Shown here: one piece after another, positions 2,187 through 27,247 of the stretch
Numbering within the stretch: position 1 is the first letter of the stretch
Layout of the letters: each line of letters starts with the position of its first letter
DNA from: Macrostomum lignano
Lineage: Eukaryota
Assembly: GCA_002269645.1 (NCBI GenBank)
Contig: NIVC01003076.1
Location: forward strand, 1-27,247
DNA: 27,247 nt
Reading direction: 5' to 3'
The notes under the pieces: model-generated
Seen by the model: the letters and a program-made list of their open reading frames with translations, nothing else
Told to the model about the DNA's origin: nothing
The model's database searches: none
Position numbers and translations under genes: made by a program

Positions 2187-2306
2187 AGCGTCTGGAAAAA
2201 TAATAAGCAACAATTATAGCTCATGGCAATCGAGAGGAAACTAAGAAACTGAAGCCTTCAATAGGGGATCTGAGCATCTGAGCATCAATGCGTCTGAGAT
2301 GGTGTG

Positions 2307-2817
2307 CAATAGGGGATCTAAAATGAGTGCAGCAGTGAGGAATAGGGCTCTGAGATGAGTGCAGCAGTGAGGAATAGGGGATCTAAAATGAGTGCAGCAG
2401 TGAGCAATAGGGGATCTGAGATGAGTGCAGCAGTGAGCAATAGGGATCTGAGATGAGTGCAGCAGTGAGCAATAGGGGATCTGAGATGAGTGCAGCAGTG
2501 AGCAATAGGGGATCTGAGATGAGTGCAGCAGTGAGCAATAGGGGATCTGAGATGAGTGCAGCAGTGAGCAATAGGGGATCTGAGATGAGTGCAGCAGTGA
2601 GCAATAGGGGATCTGAGATGAGTGCAGCAGTGAGCAATAGGGGATCTGAGATGAGTGCAGCAGTGAGCAATAGGGGATCTGAGATGAGTGCAGCAGTGAG
2701 CAATAGGGGATCTGAGATGAGTGCAGCAGTGAGCAATAGGGGATCTGAGATGAGTGCAGCAGTGAGCAATAGGGGATCTGAGATGAGTGCAGCAGTGAGC
2801 AATAGGGGATCTGAGAT
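2307..2817. repeat. 33-nt minisatellite, ~15 copies (CTGAGATGAGTGCAGCAGTGAGCAATAGGGGAT)
   Basis: Near-perfect tandem copies read directly, with more divergent copies at the left edge. It explains the periodic 11-aa ORFs at 2318-2914, 2383-2859 and 2453-2833. Confidence 0.97.
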
Positions 2818-3402
2818 AAGTGCGTACAAGTAAGACAAAAGAAATAAATGAACTCCCAAGCATTTGAAGGTATAGTTTGATCGGCAGCATCACCGTATAT
2901 ATTTTAATGGCCAAGGTGTATGATTCATTTTCTTTTAAATTAAAACAAACCGAGAATTAAAACAATGGTAACCTGTTGTCCGCAAACGAAATTGGGCATT
3001 TCATTGACCAAGCAAGCACAGCGGTATGGTATAAATAGTTTTAAAGAAAAATGTTGCTCTCTCTTAGCTCTTGAATCTACTACAGCAATTAAGGCAATGG
3101 AAGCCTACATCTCGAATATAATATATAAAAAGAAACGATTTGTTTGTAACTTAAAAAAACCACAAGAGCAAAGGTGGACTCAACTAAAAAGGAAATTAAA
3201 AACAAATTTTGAATATCAAATCATTAAGTATACGAGCAGGCTAGTTCTTTATTAACTAAATAAAAAAATTACAATCAATATATCCAGACAATGGATATTT
3301 TTGAATAAGGCAACGAAGGAAATACAGCAAATTAGGCATTCAAATACAATAGTGCACTATGGTGAGATGCCGAAGGAGGCAGATAAAGGCAAAGAGAACT
3401 TT

Positions 3403-3796
3403 GGGAATTCCATTGCGCACGTAGACTAGAGAGGGAGAATCCCATTCAGTACACATAGACTATACTGGGGGAATCCCATTGCTTACACATGGACTATACT
3501 GGGGGAATCCCATTGCGTACACATAGACTATACTGGGGGAATCCCATTGCGCACACGTAGACGATATTGGGGGAATCCCATTGCTTACACATGGACTATA
3601 CTGGGGGAATCCCATTGCGTACACATAGACTATACTGGGGAATCCCAATGCGCACACAGACTATACTGGGGGAATCCCATTGCGTACACATAGACTATAC
3701 TGGGGAATCCCATTGCGTACACAGACTATACTGGGGGAATCCCATTGCGTACACAGACTATACTGGGGAACACCATTGCGCAGACTATACTGAGGG
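3403..3796. repeat. ~31-34-nt minisatellite, ~12 copies (GGGGGAATCCCATTGCGTACACATAGACTATACT)
   Basis: Period of 34 nt measured between 3481 and 3515, with shorter variants towards the right. Confidence 0.95.
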
Positions 3797-4386: not shown

Positions 4387-7300
4387 CTACATATTAGGCG
4401 CCCATTTGATGCTCCATTGTTGGAATTTGCCCTCAGCTATGCAGCTGTGCAATCTCGGATTCTGCAAACTGGCCCCATCAATGGGCTTAGTGTCCAAGCA
4501 CAGGGCTGGGGACGCCTTTAATCTGATAAGCGTATTGGGCGGATTAAACTGGAACTGCTGCATAGCGTTGTTAATCTCGCAGCGCGAGAACAGCACCCGA
4601 GCATCCGGTGTAGCCGACATCGCTTGTAAGCACAAATCTGACGATGTGATCTGACCAGAGTCGGAGAACAGCCACTCCTGATTGCCGCCAGAGCCGTGGC
4701 ATGGATACATAGCTGGCGCCGAGCCAACAGAGGCTGTCAGCCTATCCAAACACTTCTCACCCTGCCGCAATTCGCCTCTTTTAGTCAAAGGCGCGCTGGG
4801 CGGCTTTAAATCCGGATAGACATTCTCCAAATACCATTTGAATGACCGGCAGTTCAGACGGCGACGCAGCTCAAGGCGTTCGGACACGTCGCCTGGTTGA
4901 ATGTAGCGAGCGCCGCCTGATGCCTGACGAGCGGGGAATAGTATGATACTAGCTGTGATACTTGCTTTGATAGTCGTTGTGATGCTATGAGCAATCTCCA
5001 CTACCTTGCTAAGCATCCGTAAGATAAAAAGTACTTTCAAACACAGAACAAAGGCGAATGTAGAACATTAAAATAAGATGCTGCATTTCATTGTCAGTAA
5101 CGATTTACTTGCTAAATATTGGTAGCCAGTGACAATTTGACTGTCAGCGGGCAAGAGGAAAGGTTTCCAAAACGTGATCAATATCTTAAAACTCACCTGG
5201 AAATAGAACTGTTTATATTCGTCCAGCCAGACCTCGGCAGCTCGGCGGGTATTGCGAGTGAACACTACCCCGGATCCGCCTGGAAACGAGTAGGGATGCT
5301 GCCTCCGGAACACGTGGCCAACCCGGCTACAGGGCAGAATCTCCAGCACGCAGTGGCACTGCCACACTCTCAGAGAGAATTCCAGATTCTCGGCGCCCCA
5401 AACGTCCATTTTAGTATCGTATTGGCCTAATTCGTTGAACAATTGTCTCTCGATGCTAAACAGGCCGCCAGCAATCATTGGCGTTCGAATCGGTGCGGTT
5501 GGATCGCGCGTTCTGGCCGCGAGTTCGCGCGAATTCAAATTGTCCCATTTGAATACGAGATTCCAGGCGAATCCGCCTTTTAAATTGGCCGAAGCGCCAA
5601 TATAGTCGAAATTGTCCATTCCGATGACGTCAATGATTGGCGAGACTACGGCTTTCCTATCCGATTTGATACGACTCAGCAGCGGCTGAAGCCAGTCTTT
5701 GTTGCACTCGCAGTGGCTGTCTAGAAAGGTCAACACGTGACCAGTGGCGGCGTTGGCTCCGCGAATTCTCGACCGCATTAGGCCTTCACGACGATTGTTG
5801 CGGATTAGGCGAACCTGCCGGGTTTAGTGAAGGTGCAAGAATATTATTGCAAAATCGGTTTATATAAAACTGATAGTTGGCCCAATAGTGGGTTCAGAAT
5901 ATAGTTGTCTCAGGTTAATTATCTCGCAAATTTATAAACTTATTAAAAGATCTCGACTCTCACATTGAAGTTCCTGGGTTGTCAGATGGGCTTCCGGTGT
6001 GCCTAGCAAAATTGCATAACATGTAGCTAACACATGTTACATTGGTAATACTAATTAGATGACGAAGAATTTACGTATCTTAAAACTAGGATAGTTACTC
6101 TTGCCGTTTATCCACGCTACAATATGGTGATAAACCCAATATGGTGATGGACCCAATATGGTAATGAATTCAATATAGTGATGGATCCAGTATGATGATG
6201 GATCTAATATGGTGATGGATACAATTGGGTGATGGATCCAGCATGGTGATGGATCCAATATAGTGGTGGATCCAGTATGATGATAGATCTAATATGGTGA
6301 TGGATACAATAGGGTGATGAATTCAGTATGGTGATGAATCCAGTATGATAATCGATCCAGTATGATGATGGATCTAATATAGTGATGGATACAATTGGGT
6401 GATGAATTCAGTATGGTGATGGATCCAATAGTGGTGGATCCAGTATGATGATGGATCTAATATGGTGATGGATACAATTGGGTGATGAATTCAGTATGGT
6501 GATGGATCCAATAGTGGTGGATCCAGTATGATGATGGATCTAATATGGTGATGGATACAATTGGGTGATGGATCCAGCATGGTGATGGATCCAATATAGT
6601 GGTGGATCCAGTATGATGATGGATCTAATATAGTGATGGATACAATAGGGTGATGAATTCAGTATGGTGATGAATCCAGTATGATGATGGATCTAATATG
6701 GTGATGGATACAATTGGGTGATGAATTCAGTATGGTATCAAGCCATGCTTACCTTGGCTATTTGAGTCAGCAGTTTACCAGTGTCCTCGTCCGTACTAAA
6801 ATCGTCAACAAGAATAATCTCGCGAACCAGATGGTAGGGCGACATCCGGAACACGCTGAGCACAGTGCGCACCAAGGTAGACCTGGCTTCGTTATGAAAC
6901 GTTATAACAACGCTAGTATCGGGCAAATCTGTCGAATCGTATTGAATCGAACGGCACTGCGATTCCCTAGTATCCGGCACATCTCGAATAGCTGAAACAC
7001 TGTCGCTAACCTGCTGGTTGAATTTGTTCTTGGCGTATTTGTCCTCGCCAGCGTGCCAGGCACCGCCGGCCACGTAGGCCTTCCAATCGAAGTTGGTCCA
7101 CATTACCTTGGCAACGGGTTGGGATCACTTAGCAACCGGTCTAATAAATGGCTGTAGTAGCCTGTATTTTAGGTTTTTGTTTTTTTGGCAAAACACTTGA
7201 AATTGACCAATAAAATCTGTCGCTATATGATTTTCTGAAGCCACACAACAAATAATAGTAATACTGAAATCGTCCATCTAAACCACAGATAGTAGAAAAA

Positions 7301-8545: not shown

Positions 8546-11500
8546 GAAGGCTTTATTTTACTGTTTTTTTGCTACTTTTAGTAAAAAAGATTCATAGCAA
8601 AAAATTTTGTTGTGACATCTATATACTATTTTACTCAAAAAGGCAATTTATAAAACTGAAAAAAGAATTAGTTTTTTCTCTAAAGAAAAAGCCATAGGCC
8701 TATACCTATTAGAAGTTGGACAAGATAAGATCTTGATCTCATGATTGATATTTAAGATTTACTTTTTTCTAATCAAATCTCAATCAAATCTTGATTTTAA
8801 AAAGTGCCAACAATCTGAGATATAAAAAATAAGCTAAAATAAAGAGCTTTAGGTTGAATACCAAAATTATGAATACAATATAGATTACTTAGATATTAAT
8901 ACAAGTATATTGAATCTAAAATTCAAATTAGTGCCAAAATTGAACTCATTTTAATTTTTAGTGTTACTTATGTTAGGGATTCAGCCAAGAGTTTAGATAA
9001 ATAATTATGCTATCAAAATCATATTTTTTTACAAATTAGAGGCTATGTTTTTAATGGAAGTATACAAATTTCATTTTTTAAATATATCAAATAATTAAAA
9101 AATAGAACTGTTATTTTTTGTTTTGGCTTTCTTCTCTTTAAATTAAGTATTTCAATTTTCAAGGTCTCAATTGAATCTTATATTGGATTGTCAAATAATA
9201 ATAAAACTAGTGATGGATACAAATATTTTGATTTGGAATCCAAATCTGAAAAAGTCTCACTTCTTAGAAATCCAAATGTTTTGGATTTGGAAATTTTATT
9301 TTTAAATTTCCAAATATGCTTCCAAATATGAAAAAAATCAAAACAACTAAACAAAATTATGCAAACATAAAAGAAATAGAACTTTTAAAACAAGAAAGTA
9401 AATTTTAAAAATGAGAATGCAAAATTTAATGTCATATTGCTTGTTTCTTTACAATTTATCTATTTTTGCAGTAATGTAGAGGCCTATATTTTAAAAAATT
9501 GTTATTAAGTAAAGTTATTTAACTTGGGACCTTTGAAGCATTTAGCCTAAAGTTGAAAAAACAGTTTTAATTAACCATTGTTTAAGTGTAACCATTACTA
9601 TTTTTTTTTCAAAATGTAAATGCAATGGACTTTACATGCATTATACATAGTAAAGTCATCAAATTGCAAAAACATAATATCAGTTAGCATTAGTGATTGG
9701 AATTAGTTAGATTAGATATATAAGAATTAAGTTCAATTCTAAGTTCAATTCAATTTAGATACTAAATAAATTTAATATAAGCCCAAGATAGATTGAATCT
9801 TATCAGTAAATTAAAATGTAGCACTAATACAATTACTAATTAGGTGATGAGGCATTTTTGTCACTGAAAGATGGCATAGTTACTCTCACCATTTACCTTT
9901 CACTTTTTGTCTACATTTGGAAGCACATTCGGATATTTGGATTCTGATTCTAATTTTTTTGTACATTTGGATTAAGTTTTAGAAACTTGCAAAAATCTAT
10001 ATTTAGTCCATCATTAATTAAAATCTTTTCAAAAATTCAATATTGTCTAGCTTCTATTATATACAAATATTTAGTCTATTGGTTGATACTAATAGGCCTA
10101 CTAGTTGATTTTTTGTTTATTATGTAGGGATTACTTCTGTCCTTATAAATAATCTTACAATGCCACCAGCTATTACAGGGGTTATTTCTTTTAGGCACTG
10201 TCTATGCTATTCTTATACTCTTCTAAAGATATTATTCTCTCAGTCCTAGGCATTCCTAAGATCAGAGGGTCATAGCTTACTTGCTATGTATTCCGCCCTA
10301 AGGTGGGTTTTTCAGACTGAGTCTAGACTTCTTTACCCTATGGTAGGATTCTTGCTTTCTAAAGGCAATTTCTTGGATACTAGATCTGGATTTCTCATTT
10401 TTCTGAAAATGGTTTGAACTCTCCCAATTTTGGGGCTTTTTAGGCCCCTAGTGCTTCTACCTAAATAACTAAGTCAGTAAGTATTGAACAAGGCTTCAAT
10501 TTTGAGATATTAGAATAATTTCAAGCTTGAAGCAAGTAGCAGACAAGTTGGTTTCTTCTTTCTTTTCAAATACAATAGGCCTACTTTCTAAGAAAACGAG
10601 CAATGCTAAATAAGGCCCATTTCAATTAGGCCTATATTAGTTTTCCTAAAAAACAAGTTAGACATTTTTAAAAACTAAGCTTCAGAAAGGAGGTGCAATT
10701 CCTTACTTGGCCTAGCCCTGTAGCTGTATAGAATTGAATTTGATTGCAATTTAGTAAATAAAAAATTATCAAAAATAAATGGGCTTATTATTTATATATA
10801 GACCCTAGTAGGTTATTAATATAAGTATATAAAAAGTTCAATTTTGTTAGATAAATAGGGGCCTAATTAAGTATGAATTCAATGATTGAGAACCACAACA
10901 TCCAGTATTGCAACTGAGATGCAACACATAACATCCATTAATAGGAACAAAACTCTAGTTCTAGACTTTCTAAGCTTGCATCTCAGTTACATACGCCTAT
11001 AAAACTTGTGCCTAAGATTTATGCCTAAGCCTATGAAGACTTAGACTAGGGCCTAGGTCTAGGTCTAGGAGCTTAATAAATAAAGTATATTATTCAAAAT
11101 TTAAATTAAATTTCCTGTCAAGCAATATAGCAATTTGCTTGGGCAATTTGTTTAGGCCTACCTAAATGCTGTAAACATAAAAATCGCAACCTTCCGAATG
11201 GCAACACTTCTAATGATAATTTTCTGCGCGATTTTATTTATTTAGTTAGACCTATTCAAAAAACATTGGTCAACTCAACTGCTTCGCCAGTTCGCTTTAA
11301 AAGTGAGTCTATTACTACAAACGTGAGTGAAAGGGGGAGTTTATTTTTTGAAATATAACTAATACAATACATAAGGGTTCCGGTTCATCACTGTTCTGTA
11401 TCAGTATTAGCCAATTTCTAAGCCTCGTTTCGTGTAAATCTGTGGCAGGCGGATGCCACTATTGATTTGAAGTTCGAAACGGTGACAAATTTTGCCTGTC

Positions 11501-14069: not shown

Positions 14070-17000
14070 CTAGTTCCTGTTCTCCAGCCACTCCAGAACC
14101 TTCACCAGCAGATCCCTGGCGATGCCAGAAGCCTCCTGCACCAGCCTCTTGGCCAACTCGATAGCGGCCTGCTTGCCGTGCTCAGCCAGCTCCCTCAGGA
14201 TGGCCTTGATCTGCTCCATGTCGATACCGATGATGTCCAGGATGTAGGCGTCGTCGTTGCGGTTCTCCAGCCACTCCAGAACCTTCACCAGCAGATCCCT
14301 GGCGATACCAGAAGCCTCCTGCAGCAGTCTCTTGGCCAGCTCGATAGCAGCCTGCTTGCCGTGCTCAGCCAGCTCCCTCAGGATGGCCTTGATCTGCTCC
14401 ATGTCGATACCGATGATGTCCAGGATGTAGGCGTCGTCGTTGCGGTTCTCCAGCCACTCCAGAACCTTCACCAGTAGATCCTTGGCGATGCCAGAAGCCT
14501 CCTGCAGCAGCCTCTTGGCCAGCTCGATAGCAGCCTGCTTGCCGTGCTCAGCCAGCTCCCTCAGGATGGCCTTGACCTCCTCGATGTTGATACCGATGAT
14601 GTCCAGGATGTAGGCGTCGTCGTTGCGGTTTCCAGCCACTCGAGGACACGGATGAGGATGTCCTTCAAAGCTCCCTGGGCCTCCTGCAGCAGTCTTTTGG
14701 CCAGCTCGATAGCAGCCTGCTTGCCGTGCTCAGCCAGCTCCCTCAGGATAGCCTTGACCTGCTCGATGTCGATACCGATGATGTCCAGGATATAGGCGGA
14801 CCTCTGACGCTCCAGGATCTCGAGCACCTTGATGAGGATGTCCTTCAGGGCTCCTTGAGCGTGCTCCAGCATCCTCTTGGCCAGCTCGATAGCGGCGTCC
14901 ATACCGTTCTGAGCGAGCTCCCTCAGGATGGCCTTGACCTCTTCGATGTTGATGCCGATCAGATCAAGAATGAACGGGCTCTTGTGAACTCCGAGCTTTC
15001 CCTCGATCTCCAGAATAATGATCTTCTCCATAAGTCTCATGAGCATATCCTTCATAATTCCCTGAGCTCCATCCATGAGCTCTTGAACCAGTTTCTTCGC
15101 AGCCTCAGTACCCTCCTCTCTTAGAGTCTCCATAATGCGATCGATGATAGACTGCTCATCAAAAGCCTGAATAGATTCGTTGCGATTCTCGAGCCACTCC
15201 AGAACCTTCACCAGTAGATCTTTGACAATGCCAGAAGCCTCCTGGATCATCTTCTTGGCCAGCTCAATAGCGGCCTGCTTGCCGTGCTCAGCCAGCTCCC
15301 TCAGGATAGCCTTGACCTCCTCGATGTTAATACCGATGATGTCCAGGATGTAGGCGTCGTGGTTGCGGTTCTGCAGCCACTCGAGTACCCGAATGAGGAT
15401 GTCCTTCAGAGCACCTTCGACGACCTCCTGCAGCAGCTTCTTGGCCAGCTCGATAGCGGCCTGCTTGCCGTGCTCAGCCAGCTCCCTCAGGATGGCCTTG
15501 ACCTGCTCGATGTCGATACCGATGATGTCCAGGATGTAGGCGGACCTCTGACGCTCCAGGATCTCGAGCACCTTGATGAGGATGTCCTTAAGAGCTCCTT
15601 GGGCTTCCTCCAGCATCCTCTTGGCCAGCTCGATAGCGGCCTGCTTGCCGTGCTGAGCGAGCTCCCTCAGGATGGCCTTGACCTCCTCCACGTCGATGCC
15701 GATCAGGTCCAGGATGAAAGCGTCGTCGTTGCGGTTCTCCAGCCACTCCAGAACCTTCACCAGCAGATCCCTGGCGATGCCAGAAGCCTCCTGCAGCAGT
15801 CTCTTGGCCAGCTCGATAGCGGCCTGCTTGCCGTGCTCAGCCAGCTCCCTCAGGATGGCCTTGATCTGCTCCATGTCGATACCGATGATGTCCAGGATGT
15901 AGGCGTCGTCGTTGCGGTTCTCCAGCCACTCCAGAACCTTCACCAGCAGATCCTTGGCGATGCCAGATGCCTCCTGCAGCAGTCTCTTGGCCAACTCGAT
16001 AGCGGCCTGCTTGCCGTGCTCAGCCAGCTCCCTCAGGATGGCCTTGATCTGCTCCATGTCGATACCGATGATGTCCAGGATATAGGCGGACCTCTGACGC
16101 TCCAGAATTTCGAGGACCTTGATGAGGATGTCCTTCAGGGCTCCTTGAGCGTGCTCCAACATCCTCTTGGCCAGCTCGATAGCGGCGTCCATACCGTTCT
16201 GAGCGAGCTCCCTCAGGATGGCCTTGACCTCCTCGACGTCAATGCCGATCAGGTCGAGAATGAATGCGTCGTCATTGCGGTTCTCCAGCCACTCGAGGAC
16301 ACGGATGAGGATGTCCTTCAGAGCTCCCTGGGCCTCCTGCAGCAGCCTCTTGGCCAGCTCGATAGCGGCCTGCTTGCCGTGCTCAGCCAGCTCCCTCAGG
16401 ATGGCCTTGACCTGCTCGATGTCGATACCGATGATGTCCAGGATGTAGGCGGACCTCTGACGCTCCAGGATCTCGAGCACCTTGATGAGGATGTCCTTCA
16501 GAGCTCCCTGAGCGTGCTGCAACATCTTTTTGGCCAGCTCGATAGCGGCCTGCTTTCCGTTCTGAGCGAGCTCCCTCAGGATGGCCTTGACCTCCTCCAC
16601 GTCGATGCCGATCAGGTCCAGGATGAAAGCGTCGTCGTTGCGGTTCTCCAGCCACTCCAGAACCTTCACCAGTAGATCCTTGGCAATGCCAGAAGCCTCC
16701 TGCACCAGCCTCTTGGCCAGCTCGATAGCGGCCTGCTTGCCGTGCTCAGCCAGCTCCCTCAGGATGGCCTTGATCTGCTCCATGTCGATACCGATGATGT
16801 CCAGGATGTAGGCGTCGTCGTTGCGGTTCTCCAGCCACTCCAGAACCTTTACCAGCAGATCCTTGGCGATGCCAGAAGCCTCCTGCAGCAGCCTCTTGGC
16901 CAGCTCGATAGCGGCCTGCTTGCCGTGCTCAGCCAGCTCCCTCAGGATGGCCTTGATCTGCTCCATGTCGATACCGATGATGTCCAGGATGTAGGCGGAC

Positions 17001-17275
17001 TTCTGACGCTCCAGAATTTCGAGGACCTTGATGAGGATGTCCTTCAGGGCTCCTTGAGCGTGTTCCAGCATCCTCTTGGCCAGCTCGATAGCGGCGTCCA
17101 TACCGTTCTGAGCGAGCTCCCTCAGGATAGCCTTGACTTCCTCCACGTCGATGCCGATCAGATCCAGGATGAAGGCGTCATCCTGCAGTTCACCCTTCGC
17201 TACCTCCTGCAGAGGAGCGGCCTGGGCAAAGGCGAATGCCAAAGAGGCGAGTCCTAGTAGAATCAAGAGTTTCAT
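14070..17275 (-). CDS. Secreted tandem-repeat polyprotein, unrecognised family: signal peptide + 17 amphipathic helical ~60-aa units, ~1068 aa; 1-nt deletion at 14630/14631
   Basis: ATG at 17275 gives MKLLILLGLASLAFAFAQA, a classic signal peptide. The ORF is intronless with strongly G/C-ending codons and is made of units like DDAYILDIIGIDMEQIKAILRELAEHGKQAAIELAKRLLQEASGIAKDLLVKVLEWLENRN. The 14070-14639 ORF carries units 15-17 in the adjacent frame. Confidence 0.88.
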
Positions 17276-17322: not shown

Positions 17323-17330
17323 TATTTATA
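17323..17330 (-). promoter_or_regulatory. Putative TATA box (TATAAATA) of the polyprotein gene
   Basis: Minus strand reads cgTATAAATAcaag 47 nt upstream of the signal-peptide ATG, a plausible spacing for a short 5' UTR. Confidence 0.55.
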
Positions 17331-18733
17331 CGTTTTTGAAACCGAAACCGCATGACAGGTTCTCAAGTTTTGAGTAGGCGTTGTGGAATGAAATTGTTGC
17401 TCATTCTGTTTTTGTAAGCGTTTTAAGTCACGAGTTGTCGCGTGTTGGAAGTCGCGTTGCAGTAACTTTTTAATGATAAGGAATTTTCTGCTTTCCTTTC
17501 TAGCTCTACTTCCCCCTCCCTGCTTTGTAAAAACTGGGTGGATGGTATGAGCTATTTTGCACTGAAGCTGAATGTGAAAATACTTTTAATAGCTAAAATT
17601 TGTATGTTATGCGACGAACGATAGCTTGTACATGTACTAGCAAGCAATGTAACCGCCAATCCAAATTGTTGTCAGCTGATTTTTAGTTAAAATAATCTCG
17701 ATTATTGCGCATTAATATTGGAATTTTGATTTAGAACCGTATCTAATTTTTAGTAACCAATGTCTTTTCTATTGGCGTTAAATTTATTGGCTGCCATTAA
17801 CCTGTATGTGTATATTTTAGCTCAGTTGAGCCAGAGTATGAGAAAAGTATAGTAGATACGACAATTGTCAGTTTATCTGATGTGGTATTTGCCACTTGGC
17901 ATCTTTATCAAATTCAGTAGCAAAATTAGATAAATAGATTATTTTTAAACGTTTTCAAGTTTCGCATTGTTCTTTTCAATCTTTTATAAATCATTGGATC
18001 TGTCATTGGCAATAAAGTAAATAGTTAAAGTAGTTAAGCATATTCTCAGGCAAGGAAACTTTTTAAATTCTTCTTTTAATTACAAAATAACCCTTTTTGC
18101 ACATGTTAGACTGCTCAATAACCTACGTGATCCCAGAACGATTTGACCAGATGTAAAAGACGTAAATACTGCATGTTTAGTACATTCGTAACCTTGTTAC
18201 GAGTATCTAGTAGATTTTGACGCGACCTGGGGACTTGGGGGGGGGGGTAATTCTCATGGACCCTGGCTCCAGTTCAGTGCATTCATTCATTTCAAATTAC
18301 TTTATGGGAAATTTTAGAAGAGTAAAACTGTGAATCAAGCCGGCAGGTTTTTTTGTTCGGCAGTCTACTTATATGGAAGCTCAGGGTGCAGAATATTGTA
18401 GCAATGGCGGAAAACTTTCGATGAAAATATTTATTTTTATTTGAAAATTCCACTCAAACCACAAACACAGCCTCGGTCGGACAAAAACTAAATTGAAACG
18501 CAAATTTTGTTGCTACAAGGTCTGAGCGCAGCACAGGAATTATAAAAATTGGCCGGGTTAATACATGCTCAGAAGTCTTCAAGCTGAGCTCACAATAGCA
18601 TTAGGGGTTGGAATGAATTTTTTGATTGAAGAAATCCCAGCTAAAGCAAAGCAGGTTAACGCACGCCCAATGTTCACAACACGTCCGTACACTTCAACGG
18701 GCGTTCGACGCTAATTTTACAGTTTTTTGTCAG

Positions 18734-19059
18734 CAGAAACGCAAAAAACAATCTTAAAAATACCAGCCACTAGCTAATTCTATTCCGGCCAATGCCGACC
18801 GCCCGGTTGTCATCCGCTGCCAGCCTGTCGGACTCTTCCCATCGCTCTCTGACCACCGCCCGGAGTCGCTGTGTGTCAACGCGTGCCTGGCCAGCTTCGG
18901 CCAGCAGACGGGCCAGTCGGACTTCGCTGTCGCGCAGTTGCAGGTGGTTCGCGACTCGATTCTCTTGCTGGGCGGACTGCACGGCAGACTGCTGAGGCGG
19001 TCGCGCGCGACCCGCTAAAATTTGAAGAATTATGGGAAGAATTTTTGCATTCTAATTAA
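18734..19059 (+). other. GC-rich coding-like island (unidentified exon or pseudogene fragment), probably one frameshift near 18990
   Basis: After a TTTTTTGTCAG acceptor-like site the frame reads AETQKTILKYQPLANSIPANADRPVVIRCQPVGLFPSL...VVRDSILLLGGLHG. An adjacent frame continues QTAEAVARDPLKFEELWEEFLHSN*. No product recognised. Confidence 0.3.
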
Positions 19060-19699
19060 AAAAACTATAAGCATTCTATTGGAAGCTCACACCCAGAGCC
19101 CAGTGAGAGAGCTAATTGCCTTTGAAAGCGACGCAAATTAAGCGAAAAACACAGAAATCTTAATGCTGAGAAACTCAGGAAGAGGGGGAATAAATCCGAA
19201 ATGGCTGGTGCTTCAAACAGCTGTCGCAAAACCGTCAGTTTTGCGTGATCGACAAGTTATAATGCCTTAACTTTTCGTTCTCTTTGTACATCCGTCGTGC
19301 AAATTGAAGGCTAAACTGATGGTGATGAAAATGAGCCTTAAATCCTGGCTAGATAATGATATGTTAGATAATTCATTTCACGAAACATAAAAACGTCAAT
19401 CAATATGCCGACGTCGGTTATGGCTCAAAAACCAAATACCGCAGTACTCTCTTATAGCTTTCCAGACAAGCAGAAGAACGGCGAGGTGTGCAATTCTGCC
19501 AAGCGTTTGTAATTGTTCTAAAAAATAAAATTGTGCGCTTGAGAAAGTCTCAAACACGCTTGATCTGTAAAAACTTCAACTAGGCGTTTGTGTCTGGGAT
19601 TCTGGGAACCCATCCAGAATGCTAGGTTTCCGGCATCACATACTCTATAGACTGAGGGTTTGCATCCTTTTTGCATTTTAACATTAAAATCGGGCAAAT

Positions 19700-19967
19700 C
19701 AGTGGCGTCGCCACCGGGGGACATGTTCCCCCAGTAAAAGCTATGGGAGGACATACCAATGCTTTGTCCCCCACCCCACCTTGGGACCCGTTGTGGAAAT
19801 CAAAAAAATTTTCTTCAGGACGCCAAAATGAGTGCCTGTGGCGCCAAAATGAGCGCTGACAACACCAATTCTCATAATAATGGACACGTAGGAATTTAGT
19901 CATGTACGTGTACATGTTGAATTCTTGGCTTTTTCGCTCCACCATAAAATCCATGGCGATGCCCCTG
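19700..19967 (+). mobile_element. Non-autonomous hAT-type MITE, copy 1 (268 bp)
   Basis: 14-bp TIRs CAGTGGCGTCGCCA and TGGCGATGCCCCTG (12/14 complementary). Flanks gggcaaat and ggacagat (6/8) form a decayed 8-bp TSD. Internally homologous to 22632-22943. Confidence 0.8.
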
Positions 19968-20820
19968 GGACAGATGTCTACAAAAAGCTCTCTTTGTACT
20001 TTGCGGCGATAAAAAAATTCAGATTCATTAGCTACTACTTAAAATAGTAGCTACAACAGACAGACCATCATCAAGCTCTGAGTTTTGTCAAAGACTGAGA
20101 GCCAGCATAATTCAATGAAGCGTCAATAAATGTGGATTCAATTCAATTTATAATTCATAATTCAATAAATGGATACCGTCTGACTGGAGCATAATTCGGT
20201 TCAAGTTCGGATGTCCAATTCTAGGCTCTTTTGCCTTTAAGTCGAGTTTCCCGGTCAGATCAATACTTGAGGTTATCATACAAAGCAATGGCAAATGTGG
20301 CAAACTGCAGTAACTATACGTGTCAGAGGGCAAGCCTGACGATTTTGTGTCTCATACCACTTCGCTTATCAGTTGCGCATGTTCCTTACATGTAATAAGT
20401 GAGCCATTGATAAATTTCCAATATACAAAAACTATGGCGTGAAGTTTTTGCAGAATATTTTAAGCGGGGAAGAATTCACGTTCCTCGAGCATTAGCGTTT
20501 AGCGTGCTAGCGCACCCGTTCCAGTACATGTTGTACTGTAAATCGCATTTTACTACATGTATGCATGCGGCACCATTCAAGGACAAGAGCTACCTTTTCA
20601 TGCCAAAATTAATAGGATTTTATATACTTTTGAGATAGGCCACTCATTGAATTCTAAGAAGCCAGAGAATCTCATGTGAATTTGGCGAAAGCACCGGTTG
20701 TTAAACTACTGAACTCAATTTAACGAGTGTATATGCATTGTTATGTATGTATGGTGCCCACATCCCATTTGCAATTGCTATTATTAAGTGTATATATCTC
20801 GCCCATTTCAATTTCAATCG

Positions 20821-21140
20821 GGGTTGTAGCTTAGTGCTTAGTGGACTCACGACTGAAAGGTCGGGGGTTCGATTCTCGGCCTCATTCGGAACAATTTGTG
20901 TCCTTGAGAAAGACGCTTAACTCTGCATTGCTTCAGTTCACCCAGCTGTAAAATGGGTGCCAGCATTAGCTGGGGCAATTGAAAGTGTGTGTGTGACGAC
21001 CCCCAGTCCTTGGACTGAACAGCCGTACGCAGCCTTCAGATGTGCACGCAATAGCTGCGGCTGAGCTGTCGGTTGCACATCTGCCCATTTAGCAAGTATA
21101 ATAGAGTATTATTAATAATTATTATAATTATTTTAATTAT
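20821..21140 (+). mobile_element. tRNA-derived SINE with conserved-core-like middle and (ATT)n-rich tail
   Basis: A-box-like TAGCTTAGTGC at 20827-20837 and B-box-like GGTTCGATTCT at 20866-20876. These are followed by TTGTGTCCTTGAGAAAGACGCTTAAC and CACCCAGCTGTAAAATGGGTGCC, which resemble core domains of metazoan SINE superfamilies (recalled, not aligned). The AT-rich tail is at ~21098-21140. Confidence 0.75.
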
Positions 21141-21170
21141 ACTGCGAGATATCTACCCGATCGTCAATAT

Positions 21171-23696
21171 CTAATCTTGAAACTGAAAAAGCAACTCATA
21201 AAGATATGTCGTACTTGACAGCTTGCCTGTTTGGCGTAGAATTTTGTCGACCGGCAAAGAACGCTGCTTTGACTGTTGCTGCTGCTTGCGCTGCAGATAG
21301 TGCACCGGATCCTGCAAACGCGAGCTTCTGAATTGCTCCTTCTGCTGATCACTGCCAGTCAGATTAAAATTGGTATTCGAAGAGTTCGACTGCTGCTTCT
21401 GCGGCTGCTGCAGTTGACTGCCTGCAGAGACGCCTGTAACTGCATGAGAAGCCGTCGGCGATTCGACAGGACCGCCGCCTTGAGCTGCCAGCCCGTTTCG
21501 AAGCTCAGTCAGCATGCGTAGTGCGTCGTCAACAGATCGACCGACTGGCATGTCGTTGATGGTCACCTGGCAGATTGTCTTGTTTCGGTCAATCAGAAAG
21601 GTGCCTCTGTGCAGAAGCGAGTACGAAAGAAATATCGTGTACGAAATATAAAAGGAAATGTAAGGAATATAGAGTGGAAAATAAGCAATGCTTTCTACTC
21701 AATGAGATGACTTTTTTGAGTAGACAAACTTTATCTTGCATGTTGGAACTCCATCAAGTAGTGACGGTTATCTAACAGGTTGAGAACTCCAACGAGCAGG
21801 GTAAGTATAGCTAGGGGGAGGGTAGCCCAGTTGTCCAGCGCGGTGCTCTGATGTGCCAGCGACCTAGGCTCGATTCCAAGTGCAGTCACATTAATTTTTG
21901 GGCTAAACTGGAATCTTGGTTTGGCTCTGCTCGTGCAATTAACGCCATTAAGGACCAACCTCCCAAGGCGCAGTGAAGTGTACATGCCTAACGATAAATA
22001 AAGTTAGGGCCGCTGTGCAATCCTGTGTGAGTGTGTGCCTGTGCGTATGACTGCGTACGAATCCGCACGCTTGTGTGCCTGCTCAGGGGAGTCGGCGGAA
22101 TGGGCGGAATGCCTCTCGCCGGTTGTGTGACAATTTCGCTTGAAGTTCGCCAGGGTGCACACAGCCCCTGCTCTAATAAAATTGTTAAATATTTCTAATG
22201 GTCCTTGCTCTGTGCATGCAAGAATTTTAATGAGATTCAACCGACACTTTCATTTATTTCATTTTGCTCATTTTTCAGTTGGTTTAAATTTGTCTGCACA
22301 GTCGATTGTAACAAGTGGCGCAGCCACATGCATACCTGTAGGCAGCGCCGCTAGCCGCAAGAACACCGTACGCCCTTGAGATCTCGTGCGACCTGTCGCT
22401 CAGCAGGACGATGGACTCGGCATTGCTGCCGGCTCCCAGGCCCCGTTCAGCTTTTGGCGCCTTCAACCAGGCCAGGTGAGTGTACACCGAGTCAGTGGAG
22501 CAGCACACAATGTTGCAGCTTTGCGCAGCGAATTCGGAGAACTTTTCCGTGAATTGCACTATTTCGGTTGGGCAGACGAATGTGCTGGAATGTTTAGACA
22601 TATAGCATATACTATTATTAATAATAATATTCAGGCACGTCGCCACCGGATAGGACGGGAGGGGGACATGTCCCCCCCCCCCGATAAAATCTCTGAGGGG
22701 AACATGCCAATGCTTTGGCGCCTTCGGCGCTAAAATGAGTGCCTTCGGCGCTAAAATGAGTGCCTGCGGCGCTAAAATAAGTGCCTTCGGCGCTAGAAGG
22801 AATGCCTGCGGCGCTAAAAGAAATGCTTGCGGCGTCAAAATGAGTGCCTGCGGCGCCAAAATGAGTGCCAAAATTTAGTGGACATGTGCATGTTGAATTC
22901 TTGGCTTTGTCTCCCGAACATAAAATCCATGGCGACTCCCCTGATAATATTATTATTAAGTGTACACGTCGAGGATGATAATTTTGATCGTGTATAATAT
23001 TAGAAAAAGCAAAAAATAAATAAAATGACAGAAAACATAAATATAAGGTTAGTAAATAAAGACATTTTTTGAGATGATACTGCATGGTGAACGCACTTTA
23101 GGTTCAGTATTATAAAGTCTACACAAAAGTTCCTACGACAGGACATTTGCCACAGGATTCACTCAGAAACACTTAAACTAAAGTTGAAATACGTCATTTA
23201 ATCAGCTGTAGTCTGGCTTGTGGGTGCGCGTGCACTTAGATGTGCACGTCTGGCTGGTTTGGGGGTTGGGGTTTAGCGCTGCAGCGTCTGCGTGCTTAGG
23301 GTGGTTACACCCACCCAACTTTGGCATTAAATATATTGGCGTGAGCCAGTGAGGTCTCCTCACGTTTTGTTATTCACTGCAATTCAACCCACGGTCTTAC
23401 ACAGCAATGATTGTGCATTTATTGGACGCGTTTTAAAGAATGGCCCTTACTCCCCACAAAGTGGTACTTGTACTCCCAATTACTCCATGTAATTTTAACT
23501 GTGTTACTCGGATTTTAATAATTCAAATTGGCACAACTAAGAAGTGAACTTACAAGTCAGCCGGGTAGAACACTAGTACAAGATAATCGGCACCTTTGAG
23601 GGCCTCGTCCAGAGTCAAATCGACAATTTCACCGCGACGAACAGCCTGGCTGAGCAACGGCGGCGCCGTGTCTCCGGGAGCAAGATGTGCTGGCAT
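21171..23696 (-). CDS. Peroxiredoxin, Prx1/AhpC-type, 3 exons, ~275 aa, lacking the resolving-Cys motif, with a Q/S-rich C-terminal tail
   Basis: Exons 23554-23696 (MPAHLAPGDTAP...LVFYPAD), 22336-22584 and 21171-21606. Splicing restores FYPADF|TFVCPTE and AYR|GTFLID...QVTINDMPVGRSVDDALR with GT/AG sites and matching phases. The last ~30-45 nt could contain a further small intron. Confidence 0.88.
21814..22002 (+). mobile_element. Second, distinct tRNA-derived SINE-like element in Prx intron 2
   Basis: A-box-like TAGCCCAGTTG at 21823-21833, B-box-like GGCTCGATTCC at 21867-21877, and an ATAAATAAA end at ~22002. Possible TSD agctaggg/agttaggg. Confidence 0.5.
22632..22943 (+). mobile_element. 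Non-autonomous hAT-type MITE, copy 2 (312 bp), in Prx intron 1
   Basis: TIRs CAGGCACGTCGCCA and TGGCGACTCCCCTG (11/14). Perfect 8-bp TSD ATAATATT at 22624-22631 and 22944-22951. An 8-bp TSD with short TIRs is the established hAT signature. Confidence 0.9.
22717..22870. repeat. 21-nt tandem repeat (~7 copies, GGCGCTAAAATGAGTGCCTTC) inside MITE copy 2
   Basis: Read directly, and it produces the 7-aa periodicity (ALILAPQ) in ORF 22284-22871. MITE copy 1 has only ~2 copies. Confidence 0.9.
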
Positions 23697-24307
23697 GCCT
23701 TCCTGATGCAATAAATATGTGTATTAATATCCAAATATTTATATAGTTTTGAATTGCCCAATCTTACTAAGCTAACAGCGCTTTGACTGGCACCCAAAAT
23801 GACATCCTATTTGTCTATTTGTCTTAATTGAAAACGAGAGAGAAGATTAATTAGTACAAATAGTATGACCATGGCCACAGACAGAATGTTAGCGTTCCAA
23901 AGCGTGTGTACTCAGCCAAGCAAAATGCCAACATCTCTGCTCTACCCGATCTTACACTGCGGCGAGCCTCTCTGACCCGCAGAAGTTGCAGAAGACTGCG
24001 GACTCCATGTTTACAGATTACTCAAGTTTGAAAGTTGGTGAAGGTCTTAAGATCCCAAACCCCAATATTTTTAATAAAATTATTGATACTTCAAATGAAA
24101 CGTGAATTACAGAAGTATTCGGAACCTAAATTTATTGGCATCTAGATTAGAATGATCTGCAATTTGGCATCCGGGATCCAAATTCAAAACGCCAAAATTA
24201 AACTTGATGCGTCGTAAAACACGTTACGCTATGGCACAAAAAACCTAATTCCAACCAATTGTATTTATTTTAAGTACTACAAATTATCTATATATCTACT
24301 CGTACAT

Positions 24308-26785: not shown

Positions 26786-27247
26786 CTAGCTGCTGTTCTC
26801 CAGCCACTCCAGAACCTTCACCAGCAGATCCCTGGCAATGCCAGAAGCCTCCTGCACCAGCCTCTTGGCCAGCTCGATAGCAGCCTGCTTGCCGTGCTCA
26901 GCCAGCTCCCTCAGGATGGCCTTGACCTCCTCGATGTTGATACCGATGATGTCCAGGATGTAGGCGTCGTCGTTGCGGTTCTCAAGCCACTCGAGGACAC
27001 GGATGAGGATGTCCTTCAGAGCTCCCTGGGCCTCCTGCAGCAGTCTCTTGGCCAGCTCGATAGCGGCCTGCTTGCCGTGCTCAGCCAGCTCCCTCAGGAT
27101 AGCCTTGACCTGCTCGATGTCGATACCGATGATGTCCAAGATGTAGGCGGACCTCTGACGCTCCAGGATCTCGAGCACCTTGATGAGGATGTCCTTAAGA
27201 GCTCCTTGGGCTTCCTCCAGCATCCTCTTGGCCAGCTCGATAGCGGC
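26786..27247 (-). CDS. Second copy (paralog) of the secreted helical-repeat polyprotein, 3' end only (runs off the window)
   Basis: The last 2.5 units are nearly identical to units in 14070-17275, ending ...VLEWLENSS* instead of ...ENRN*. The sequence after the stop is unrelated to that of copy 1. Confidence 0.9.
   Translation of the reverse strand, partial: AAIELAKRMLEEAQGALKDILIKVLEILERQRSAYILDIIGIDIEQVKAILRELAEHGKQAAIELAKRLLQEAQGALKDILIRVLEWLENRNDDAYILDIIGINIEEVKAILRELAEHGKQAAIELAKRLVQEASGIARDLLVKVLEWLENSS

What the first reader, a model, noticed from the sequence alone, without database searches (positions are those of the whole stretch)
14070..17275. Candidate new system: secreted, cysteine-free polyprotein of 17 amphipathic helical units, present in at least two copies
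Seen: signal peptide, short pro-segment, then 16 canonical ~60-aa units plus one divergent unit. The gene is intronless with an upstream TATA-like box and strongly biased codons. Canonical units have no Cys, Pro or Thr, show helical hydrophobic periodicity (I/L/V/A faces), carry conserved Gly breaks (IIGI, EHG/QNG, SG/QG) and are slightly acidic (one 57-aa unit has 10 D/E versus 8 K/R). I recognise no family. Inference: a highly expressed gland or secretory precursor giving many copies of a small lipid- or membrane-interacting protein, for example for defence, mucus/rhabdite, yolk, seminal or adhesion-release roles. It would be analogous in architecture, not necessarily homologous, to nematode polyprotein allergens and prosaposin.
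Basis: partly seen in the sequence, partly recalled or inferred. Interest (0 to 1): 0.85.

Follow-up and report, generated by a model that had tools for sequence, protein, structure and literature searches.

The report
Orphan secreted 17-module helical repeat protein
A flatworm (Macrostomum lignano) gene encodes a secreted, cysteine-free protein of 17 tandem ~60-residue three-helix modules with no known family, but nothing shows that it is cut into units or binds lipid, and this copy carries a one-base deletion.

Summary
The repeat is real. The minus strand of 14070-17275 carries a signal peptide, a 14-aa acidic spacer and 17 tandem 59-65-aa units (16 canonical, unit 12 divergent). It has no Cys, strong codon bias and a TATAAATA 48 nt upstream. 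A sister contig of the same Macrostomum lignano assembly is identical at every other base and has the intact ORF, so a PacBio consensus error is most likely.

No Pfam, PDB-sequence or PDB-fold match exists. An exhaustive HMMER scan of 1.84 billion proteins found only the gene's own copies, a few short fragments from unidentified eukaryotes and one match read as spurious; one fragment, found by a second, word-indexed profile search, has a signal peptide. dN/dS among units is 0.1-0.4, so the peptide sequence is under constraint. AlphaFold2 gives each unit as a three-helix bundle (pLDDT 81).

The polyprotein and lipid-binding reading is not supported. No furin-type sites exist, and the unit junctions are of two unrelated kinds. 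Bundle packing explains most of the amphipathicity.

My best reading is an abundant, lineage-restricted secretory protein exported as a ~118 kDa string of helical modules. Its tissue and role are unknown. Interest is moderate.

The parts
17323..17330 (-). TATAAATA box, 48 nt upstream of the start codon
   Evidence: The paralogue on L003 has CATATATAC at a similar distance from its ATG.
17219..17275 (-). Start codon and 19-aa signal peptide MKLLILLGLASLAFAFAQA. Cleavage after AQA is predicted by the -3/-1 rule.
   Evidence: It is conserved in paralogue P0004, and an analogous signal peptide is present in the distant homologue P0010.
17177..17218 (-). 14-aa acidic N-terminal spacer APLQEVAKGELQDD
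   Evidence: P0010 has a comparable 16-aa acidic spacer.
14978..17176 (-). Units 1-12. The order is B A A B A' B A A B A' A, then divergent unit 12 (14978-15172). Units 1-5 and 6-10 form a 5-unit higher-order repeat.
   Evidence: Unit coordinates, alignment, nucleotide identity matrix.
14630..14977 (-). Units 13 and 14. Unit 14 is the last one in the frame of the start codon.
14630..14631 (-). Site of a 1-nt deletion (a missing G) relative to the sister contig. It causes a frameshift and a stop at 14561-14563.
14073..14615 (-). Units 15-17, in the shifted frame in this contig
   Evidence: They are in frame in L002/P0002.
14070..14072 (-). TAG stop directly after unit 17 (...LEWLENRN*)
26786..27247 (-). 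3' end of a second, paralogous gene, cut by the contig end. It holds about 2.5 units, ends ...LEWLENSS* and is of the P0004 type.
   Evidence: Its 3' flank matches L003.

Best explanation
This is a genuine gene of the free-living flatworm Macrostomum lignano, restricted to its lineage. It encodes a secreted, acidic protein of about 118 kDa. After a cleaved signal peptide and a short acidic spacer come 17 tandem modules. Each module is a conserved hydrophobic lead-in (A-Y/F-I-L-D-x-I-G-I-D) followed by three 14-15-residue amphipathic helices, separated by invariant glycines, that fold into a small three-helix bundle.

The one-base deletion in this contig is most likely a consensus error of the PacBio-based assembly, not a property of the gene.

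Inferred, not shown: the protein is made in large amounts by a secretory cell type and leaves the cell as an uncleaved string of helical modules. The lead-in motif and the unusually broad hydrophobic face of helix 3 would let modules pack on each other, self-associate, or hold a hydrophobic partner. On this reading it is a bulk secretory or structural material rather than a precursor of free peptides.
For: Gene reality:
- 17 units are present.
- Unit protein sequence is under purifying selection: B versus B dS 0.34 and dN 0.042; A versus B dS 0.65 and dN 0.24.
- A signal peptide is present here, in the paralogue, and in a homologue with 51% identity to a canonical unit.
- The neighbours are ordinary intron-containing metazoan genes: peroxiredoxin, ppGalNAc-transferase and Hakai-like RING.

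Organism: the contig is NIVC01003076.1 of GCA_002269645.1, and NIVC00000000 is the Mlig_3_7 assembly.

Deletion as an error:
- The sister contig L002 is identical at all other positions of the aligned 3.28 kb and has the intact ORF, P0002.
- A third copy, L008, differs from L002 by 4 indels but only 1 mismatch over 2.8 kb.

Fold: AlphaFold2 on a single unit gives pLDDT 80.9 and pTM 0.64, with helices at 11-24, 26-39 and 43-57. The 5-unit model repeats this pattern with junctions below pLDDT 50.

Uncleaved product: there are no RxxR or Rx[KR]R motifs, and the junctions are heterogeneous.

Extra hydrophobic surface: the helix 3 hydrophobic arc is 200-280 degrees in all homologues, and the lead-in motif is the best-conserved stretch.

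High expression: TATA box, no introns, ENC 32.7 and the highest GC3 in the window.

Indirect transcript support: P0003 is in nr/UniRef, and the GenBank annotation of this assembly derives from RNA-seq-guided transcripts.
Against: - No expression, proteomic or localisation data could be reached, so tissue, abundance and processing state are all inferred.
- The 5-unit AlphaFold2 model is poor (pLDDT 59.7, pTM 0.26) and says nothing reliable about packing between units.
- Low-confidence linkers would also fit cleavage by an unknown protease.
- Every unit carries a KR or KK, although inside helix 2.
- The deletion could be a real null allele of one homeologue.
Confidence: 0.5

Rival explanations
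1. This is the first reader's model: a true polyprotein. The precursor is cut at each unit junction in the secretory pathway or after release. That would yield about 17 copies of a ~7 kDa helical protein that binds fatty acids or other hydrophobic ligands, or membranes. It would be a functional analogue of nematode polyprotein allergens or cestode antigen B.
For: - The tandem units are near-identical, with low-confidence junctions in the model.
- Polar, acidic residues nearly always precede the conserved A-Y/F-I-L-D motif, here and in distant homologues.
- The units are more hydrophobic than a minimal bundle needs (51-53% hydrophobic residues), and helix 3 has a 200-280 degree hydrophobic arc.
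- From my own knowledge: parasitic flatworms rely on abundant small helical lipid carriers.
Against: - There is no furin or convertase motif at any junction.
- The two junction types (ENRNDD, ERQRS) share no P1-P4 pattern.
- No HMM similarity to NPA, FAR, Taeniidae antigen, apolipoprotein or saposin families appears even at E<=10.
- The single unit folds as a closed bundle in the prediction.
Confidence: 0.25
2. The precursor is cut by a prohormone-convertase-type enzyme at the KR/KK found once per unit in ELAK[RK]. That would release ~61-aa peptides in a circularly permuted register (LLQEASG...AAIELA). These would be amphipathic effector or antimicrobial-like peptides.
For: All 17 units, including divergent unit 12 (30-35% identity to a canonical unit), keep a dibasic pair at the same position.
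Against: - The site lies in the middle of helix 2, the best-predicted part of the bundle (pLDDT about 91).
- It is replaced by LEQ or VEQ in one unit type of the distant homologues.
- The products would be acidic, unlike typical membrane-active peptides.
Confidence: 0.05
3. The window copy is a real pseudogene or null allele. The 1-nt deletion is biological, and this homeologue makes a truncated 14-unit protein with a 23-aa out-of-frame tail.
For: The deletion is in the assembled sequence. The DV1 line carries extra chromosome copies, which relaxes selection on any one copy.
Against: - The rest of the 3.28 kb is 100% identical to the intact copy, while the 9.3-kb aligned block that contains the gene differs by 50 mismatches and 31 gap openings.
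- Indels outnumber substitutions between copies in this assembly. That is the signature of long-read consensus error.
Confidence: 0.15
4. It is not a gene. A 183-nt satellite happens to be open in one frame.
For: The genome is rich in tandem repeats. The antisense strand also has long ORFs.
Against: - A signal peptide, a TATA box and a stop exactly at a unit end are present.
- dN/dS is well below 1 between units.
- Homologues at 40-52% identity keep a signal peptide and have spliceosomal introns.
- The predicted fold is confident.
Confidence: 0.02

Closest known systems
Nematode polyprotein allergens/antigens (NPA: ABA-1, gp15/400, DvA-1). Comparison from my own knowledge.
   Same: Signal peptide followed by many tandem, near-identical, all-helical, Cys-poor units encoded in one ORF. 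Abundant secreted product of a worm.
   Different: NPA units are about 130 aa, are separated by conserved tetrabasic (furin-type) sites and are proven lipid binders. Here units are about 60 aa with no such sites, there is no HMM similarity, and binding is untested. The phylum also differs.
Staphylococcal protein A-type arrays of tandem three-helix-bundle domains, and similar bacterial surface arrays such as GA modules. Architectural analogue, from my own knowledge.
   Same: Secreted, Cys-free string of 58-61-aa three-helix bundles joined by short linkers. The array functions uncleaved as a multivalent unit.
   Different: Those are bacterial, cell-wall anchored and of known ligand specificity. 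No sequence or fold-search match appears here. This protein has 17 modules, an extra hydrophobic lead-in motif and no anchor.
Cestode hydrophobic-ligand-binding proteins / Echinococcus antigen B (Taeniidae antigen family). From my own knowledge.
   Same: Flatworm-restricted, secreted, Cys-free, amphipathic helical modules of about 7-8 kDa that self-associate.
   Different: These are encoded as separate single-unit genes, not a tandem array. No Pfam match to that family even at E<=10. Lipid binding is not shown here.
Prosaposin
   Same: Secreted precursor with tandem small helical domains.
   Different: Saposin domains are defined by six conserved cysteines. This protein has none.
Exchangeable apolipoproteins (apoA-I/A-IV/E, apolipophorin III). 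From my own knowledge.
   Same: Secreted, largely Cys-free, amphipathic helices. Helix bundles that could open on lipid.
   Different: Those have 11/22-mer periodicity, often punctuated by Pro. Here the period is 61 aa, breaks are at Gly with no Pro, and there is no HMM match.

Membership tests
Nematode polyprotein allergen (NPA) | Sequence/HMM similarity to NPA units | tested here: not met
   hmmscan against Pfam-A at E<=10 (whole protein, 2-unit construct) and E<=1 (16 single units) lists no NPA family. No family is hit by more than 3 of 16 units, and all hits are below gathering score.
Nematode polyprotein allergen (NPA) | Conserved multibasic (furin-type) cleavage site between units | tested here: not met
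   No RxxR or Rx[KR]R anywhere. Junctions are ENRNDD|AY or ERQRS|AY.
Nematode polyprotein allergen (NPA) | Post-translational cleavage into units; fatty-acid/retinol binding | not testable with these tools
   Needs proteomics and ligand-binding assays.
Saposin-like proteins / prosaposin | Six conserved cysteines forming three disulfides per domain | tested here: not met
   Zero Cys in 1068 residues.
Exchangeable apolipoproteins | HMM match; 11/22-residue amphipathic repeats, commonly Pro-punctuated | tested here: not met
   No Pfam hit. The repeat period is 183 nt, or 61 aa. Pro is absent from canonical units.
Taeniidae antigen / cestode HLBP | HMM match to the family; single-unit genes | tested here: not met
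   No hit. The gene is a 17-unit array.
Protein A B-domain-like three-helix bundles | Sequence or structural match to solved bundles | tested here: not met
   PDB profile search: best E 0.004, to designed alphaRep repeats, with nothing specific. Foldseek versus PDB: best E 2.1, generic MIT-like bundles.
Secreted tandem-repeat protein (generic kind) | N-terminal signal peptide plus head-to-tail repeated coding units under protein-level constraint | tested here: met
   The signal peptide was judged by the n/h/c and -3/-1 rules only, because no predictor was available.
New family: Macrostomum 61-aa module | A-Y/F-I-[IL]-D-x-I lead-in, invariant G25 and G42, three-helix core; found beyond this genome | tested here: met
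   Alignments A3 and A4. Homologues are P0006 (E 1e-17) and P0007 (E 1e-7) by exhaustive HMMER and P0010/P0011 (E about 1e-11).

The most novel reading that the evidence does not exclude
A flatworm polyprotein would be the first of its type outside nematodes. On this reading the 17-unit precursor is cut by a non-convertase protease before the conserved A-Y/F-I-L-D motif into ~7 kDa three-helix proteins. These would carry or sequester hydrophobic ligands, or act as a surfactant or release factor, in a gland secretion of Macrostomum. It would represent a structurally new family of small helical lipid-binding proteins.
Probability: 0.15. Interest if true: 0.7.

Novelty: new variant of a known kind. 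Interest (0 to 1): 0.38.

Why it matters
M. lignano is a transgenic model flatworm used for work on regeneration, adhesion and sexual selection. An abundant, lineage-restricted secretory protein with a compact TATA promoter could mark a gland cell type and supply a strong cell-type-specific promoter.

The protein is also an unusually regular natural array of tiny three-helix bundles with no relatives among solved structures. If it proved to be processed and lipid-binding, it would be an independent invention of the nematode polyprotein strategy.

As it stands it is an uncharacterised orphan repeat protein, a common category in invertebrate genomes.

Tried and rejected
- Pfam scans of the whole protein gave apparent hits (GDH_HM3, Ribosomal_L10, CUT and others) with E down to 1e-15. 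These are sums of many sub-threshold repeat matches with no or very few single stretches that pass on their own. They vanish on single units, so I rejected them.
- P0008 (950 aa, E 1e-5) is an unrelated repeat protein that matches only positions 4-42 through summed weak stretches. I treated it as spurious.
- P0009, which seemed to fuse a bacterial Rho N-terminal domain to a unit, is a chimeric 506-bp metagenome contig. It is not evidence of a bacterial relative or an HeH fold.
- I did not send the 5-unit AlphaFold2 model to fold search because its confidence was too low.
- A JGI metagenome contig scan with the environmental-unit profile found nothing. The broader profile could not be back-translated.
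- A search for transcript-derived proteins using the unique N-terminal 93 aa found only the window's own fragment.
- Literature searches found no description of this protein. I searched for the peptide strings, for assembly GCA_041443025, and for repeat-rich secreted M. lignano proteins including the seminal-fluid screen.
- EF-hand and SAP/HeH resemblances of the lead-in plus helix 1 were considered from memory and dropped, because no profile or fold match supports them.
Full report
**Source of the window.** The window is the complete contig NIVC01003076.1 of assembly GCA_002269645.1. NIVC00000000 is the Mlig_3_7 genome of the free-living flatworm Macrostomum lignano, line DV1. It was assembled with Canu from PacBio reads plus Illumina and 454 data. 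The assembly is known to contain 180 Mb of non-repetitive blocks duplicated at 95% identity or more, because of extra chromosome copies.

**What is in the sequence.** Tandem Repeats Finder reports a 183-nt unit repeated 17.0 times at 14079-17179, with score 2980. The coding strand is the minus strand.
- The reading frame starts at the ATG at 17275. It reads MKLLILLGLASLAFAFAQA|APLQEVAKGELQDD, then 17 units of 59-65 aa, and ends with TAG at 14072-14070 directly after unit 17.
- Sixteen units are canonical and fall into two main types. The A type is AYILDIIGIDMEQIKAILRELAEHGKQAAIELAKRLLQEASGIAKDLLVKVLEWLENRNDD. The B type is AFILDLIGIDVEEVKAILRELAQNGMDAAIELAKRMLEHAQGALKDILIKVLEILERQRS.
- Unit 12 is divergent, with 30-35% identity to a canonical unit.
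- Units 1-5 and 6-10 form a 5-unit higher-order repeat.
There is no Cys. Pro occurs only at residues 21 and 767. Thr occurs only in unit 12. D/E versus K/R is 197 to 140. The mature protein is 118 kDa with pI 4.9, and it has a single N-x-S/T sequon.
- Three glycines (G8, G25, G42) are invariant.
- TATAAATA lies 48 nt upstream of the ATG. The upstream in-frame ATG at 17353 would include that TATA box and is absent from the paralogue, so MKLL is the start.
- Codon use is strongly biased: ENC 32.7 and GC3 0.80-0.81. Coding stretches of the neighbouring genes have GC3 of 0.48-0.70.

The interval 14070-17275 is 3206 nt, which is not a multiple of three. One G is missing at 14630/14631 (CTGGA-AACCGC). 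In this contig the ORF therefore stops at 14561 after 14 units and a 23-aa out-of-frame tail, and units 15-17 sit in another frame.
- The database gene model P0001 (784 aa) hides this with an artificial intron.
- The sister contig NIVC01004150.1 (L002) has the same neighbours. It is identical at every other aligned position of the 3.28 kb and carries the intact ORF, P0002.
- A third copy, NIVC01000648.1 (L008), is interrupted by a 446-N scaffold gap. It differs from L002 by 4 indels and 1 mismatch over 2.8 kb.
- Indels outnumbering substitutions is the pattern of long-read consensus error. I therefore read the deletion as most likely an assembly artefact (about 85%) and not a real null allele (about 15%).

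**Copies.** The 3' end of a second, paralogous gene lies at 26786-27247. It ends ...LEWLENSS* and is cut by the contig end. It corresponds to the 12-unit paralogue P0004 on NIVC01003077.1, with a matching 3' flank. The order on the minus strand is:
- the paralogue;
- peroxiredoxin (23696-18770, with its own TATAAATA);
- the 17-unit gene;
- ppGalNAc-transferase exons (7103-4387);
- a Hakai-like RING finger (1887-1258).

Part of the multiplicity is true tandem paralogy. Part is the homeologue or haplotig redundancy of this assembly.

**Is it a real coding sequence?** Yes, on three grounds.
- Between units, synonymous divergence far exceeds non-synonymous divergence. B versus B gives dS 0.34 and dN 0.042. 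A versus A gives 0.091 and 0.018. A versus B gives 0.65 and 0.24.
- An exhaustive HMMER search of 1.84 billion representative proteins with the unit profile returned only four proteins. These were the window's own fragment, two short metagenome-derived fragments (P0006 at E 1e-17 and P0007 at E 1e-7), and one match I judge spurious.
- A second, word-indexed profile search added P0010 and P0011 from very short contigs of an unidentified large NCBI assembly, GCA_041443025.1. P0010 has a signal peptide, a 16-aa acidic spacer and then the AYIIDKI... unit. The metagenome loci show a GT-AG intron within helix 3 (both ends visible in L004; L005 shows a splice acceptor at the same place), so they come from eukaryotes.

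The family therefore exists beyond M. lignano but is very narrowly distributed. The GenBank annotation of this assembly was built from RNA-seq-guided transcripts, and one copy (P0003) is present in nr/UniRef. That is indirect evidence of transcription, and no direct expression data were reachable.

**Known families.** None fits.
- Whole-protein Pfam 'hits' are repeat-summed noise and disappear on single units. No family is matched by more than 3 of 16 units, and none reaches its gathering score.
- The PDB profile search gives only E 0.004 to designed alphaRep repeats.
- AlphaFold2 on one unit with a 16-row alignment gives pLDDT 80.9 and pTM 0.64. The model has a floppy N-terminal turn (residues 2-5 below pLDDT 50) and helices at 11-24, 26-39 and 43-57.
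- Foldseek against the PDB finds only generic three-helix bundles, with E of 2.1 or worse.
- A 5-unit model repeats the same secondary structure, with junctions below pLDDT 50. Its overall confidence is poor (59.7, pTM 0.26), so packing between units is unknown.

**How it probably works.** These points are shown: it has the hallmarks of a secreted protein, it is modular, and it is constrained at the protein level. The rest is inferred.
- The polyprotein idea lacks its usual signature. There is no RxxR or Rx[KR]R anywhere, and the two junction types (ENRNDD|A[YF]ILD and ERQ[RK]S|AYILD) share no protease-recognition pattern.
- A KR or KK occurs once per unit, including unit 12. It sits in the centre of helix 2, the best-predicted part of the bundle, and is not conserved in one unit type of the distant homologues.
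- The amphipathicity of helices 1 and 2 (arcs of 120-160 degrees, muH 0.47-0.57) is what bundle packing requires. It is not evidence for membrane or lipid binding.
- Two features go beyond a minimal bundle. Helix 3 has a 200-280 degree hydrophobic arc in every homologue. The very hydrophobic lead-in A-Y/F-I-[IL]-D-x-I is the most conserved motif. These point to packing between modules, self-association or a hydrophobic partner.
- There are almost no Ser or Thr residues and only one sequon, so it is not a mucin-type glycoprotein. The neighbouring GalNAc-transferase gene is probably coincidental.

I therefore favour an abundant secretory product exported as an uncleaved ~118 kDa string or rod of three-helix modules (0.5). 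The processed lipid-carrier polyprotein follows at 0.25. The probability that the deletion is a real null allele (0.15) answers a separate question, and the remaining rivals are minor.

**Comparison and novelty.** In architecture it resembles nematode polyprotein allergens and, as an uncleaved array of ~60-aa three-helix bundles, staphylococcal protein A. It fails the testable defining features of NPAs, saposins, apolipoproteins and cestode antigen B. It is an uncharacterised, taxonomically restricted family of a familiar general kind, the secreted tandem-repeat protein. That is interesting for Macrostomum biology and as a natural mini-bundle array, but it is not a new 'system'.

Noticed in passing
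window 14630-14631: A one-base deletion relative to the otherwise identical sister contig breaks the ORF. The database gene model P0001 bridges it with a spurious intron that removes about 4.7 units.
   Followed up: yes
all 17 units, e.g. window 16895-16900 (unit 2): Every unit has a KR or KK at the same position in helix 2 (ELAK[RK]), including the divergent unit. It is not conserved in one unit type of the environmental homologues.
   Followed up: partly
L007 1-506: A 506-bp metagenome contig joins the 5' end of a bacterial rho gene (Rho_N domain) to a Macrostomum-like terminal unit at the shared peptide FAILKELAE. It is almost certainly an assembly chimera. It also shows that DNA of a close relative (89% aa identity) is present in that sample.
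   Followed up: partly
L004 1-616 and L005 1-360: Environmental homologues have a GT-AG intron inside helix 3 (both ends seen in L004; L005 shows a splice acceptor at the same place). In L004 I read the intron as roughly 100 nt and phase 1. L004 is a collapsed tandem repeat whose two ends are the same sequence. The M. lignano genes are intronless.
   Followed up: partly
L008 about 9000-9460: The third genomic copy, on NIVC01000648.1, has a 446-N scaffold gap in place of its 5' part and several frameshifts just after it.
   Followed up: partly
window 18770-23743: A peroxiredoxin (AhpC-TSA) gene lies between the two paralogues on the same strand, with its own TATAAATA at 23743-23736. A 21-nt x7 satellite at 22720-22869 lies inside it.
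   Followed up: partly
window 4387-7103 and 1258-1887: Exons of a ppGalNAc-transferase (GT2 plus ricin B lectin) and a Hakai-like RING/zinc-finger ORF lie on the minus strand downstream. The same synteny is seen on L002 and L008.
   Followed up: partly
window 2302-2823, 3403-3780, 6120-6736: Three satellites: 33 nt x16 at 96% identity, 34 nt x11, and 17/85 nt x36. The long ORFs over 2318-2914 are repeat artefacts (HLRSPIAHCCT x11).
   Followed up: partly
window 14726-17257, + strand: Long antisense ORFs (up to 463 aa) run opposite the gene. They are a by-product of the repeat and GC3-rich codon use, not genes.
   Followed up: no
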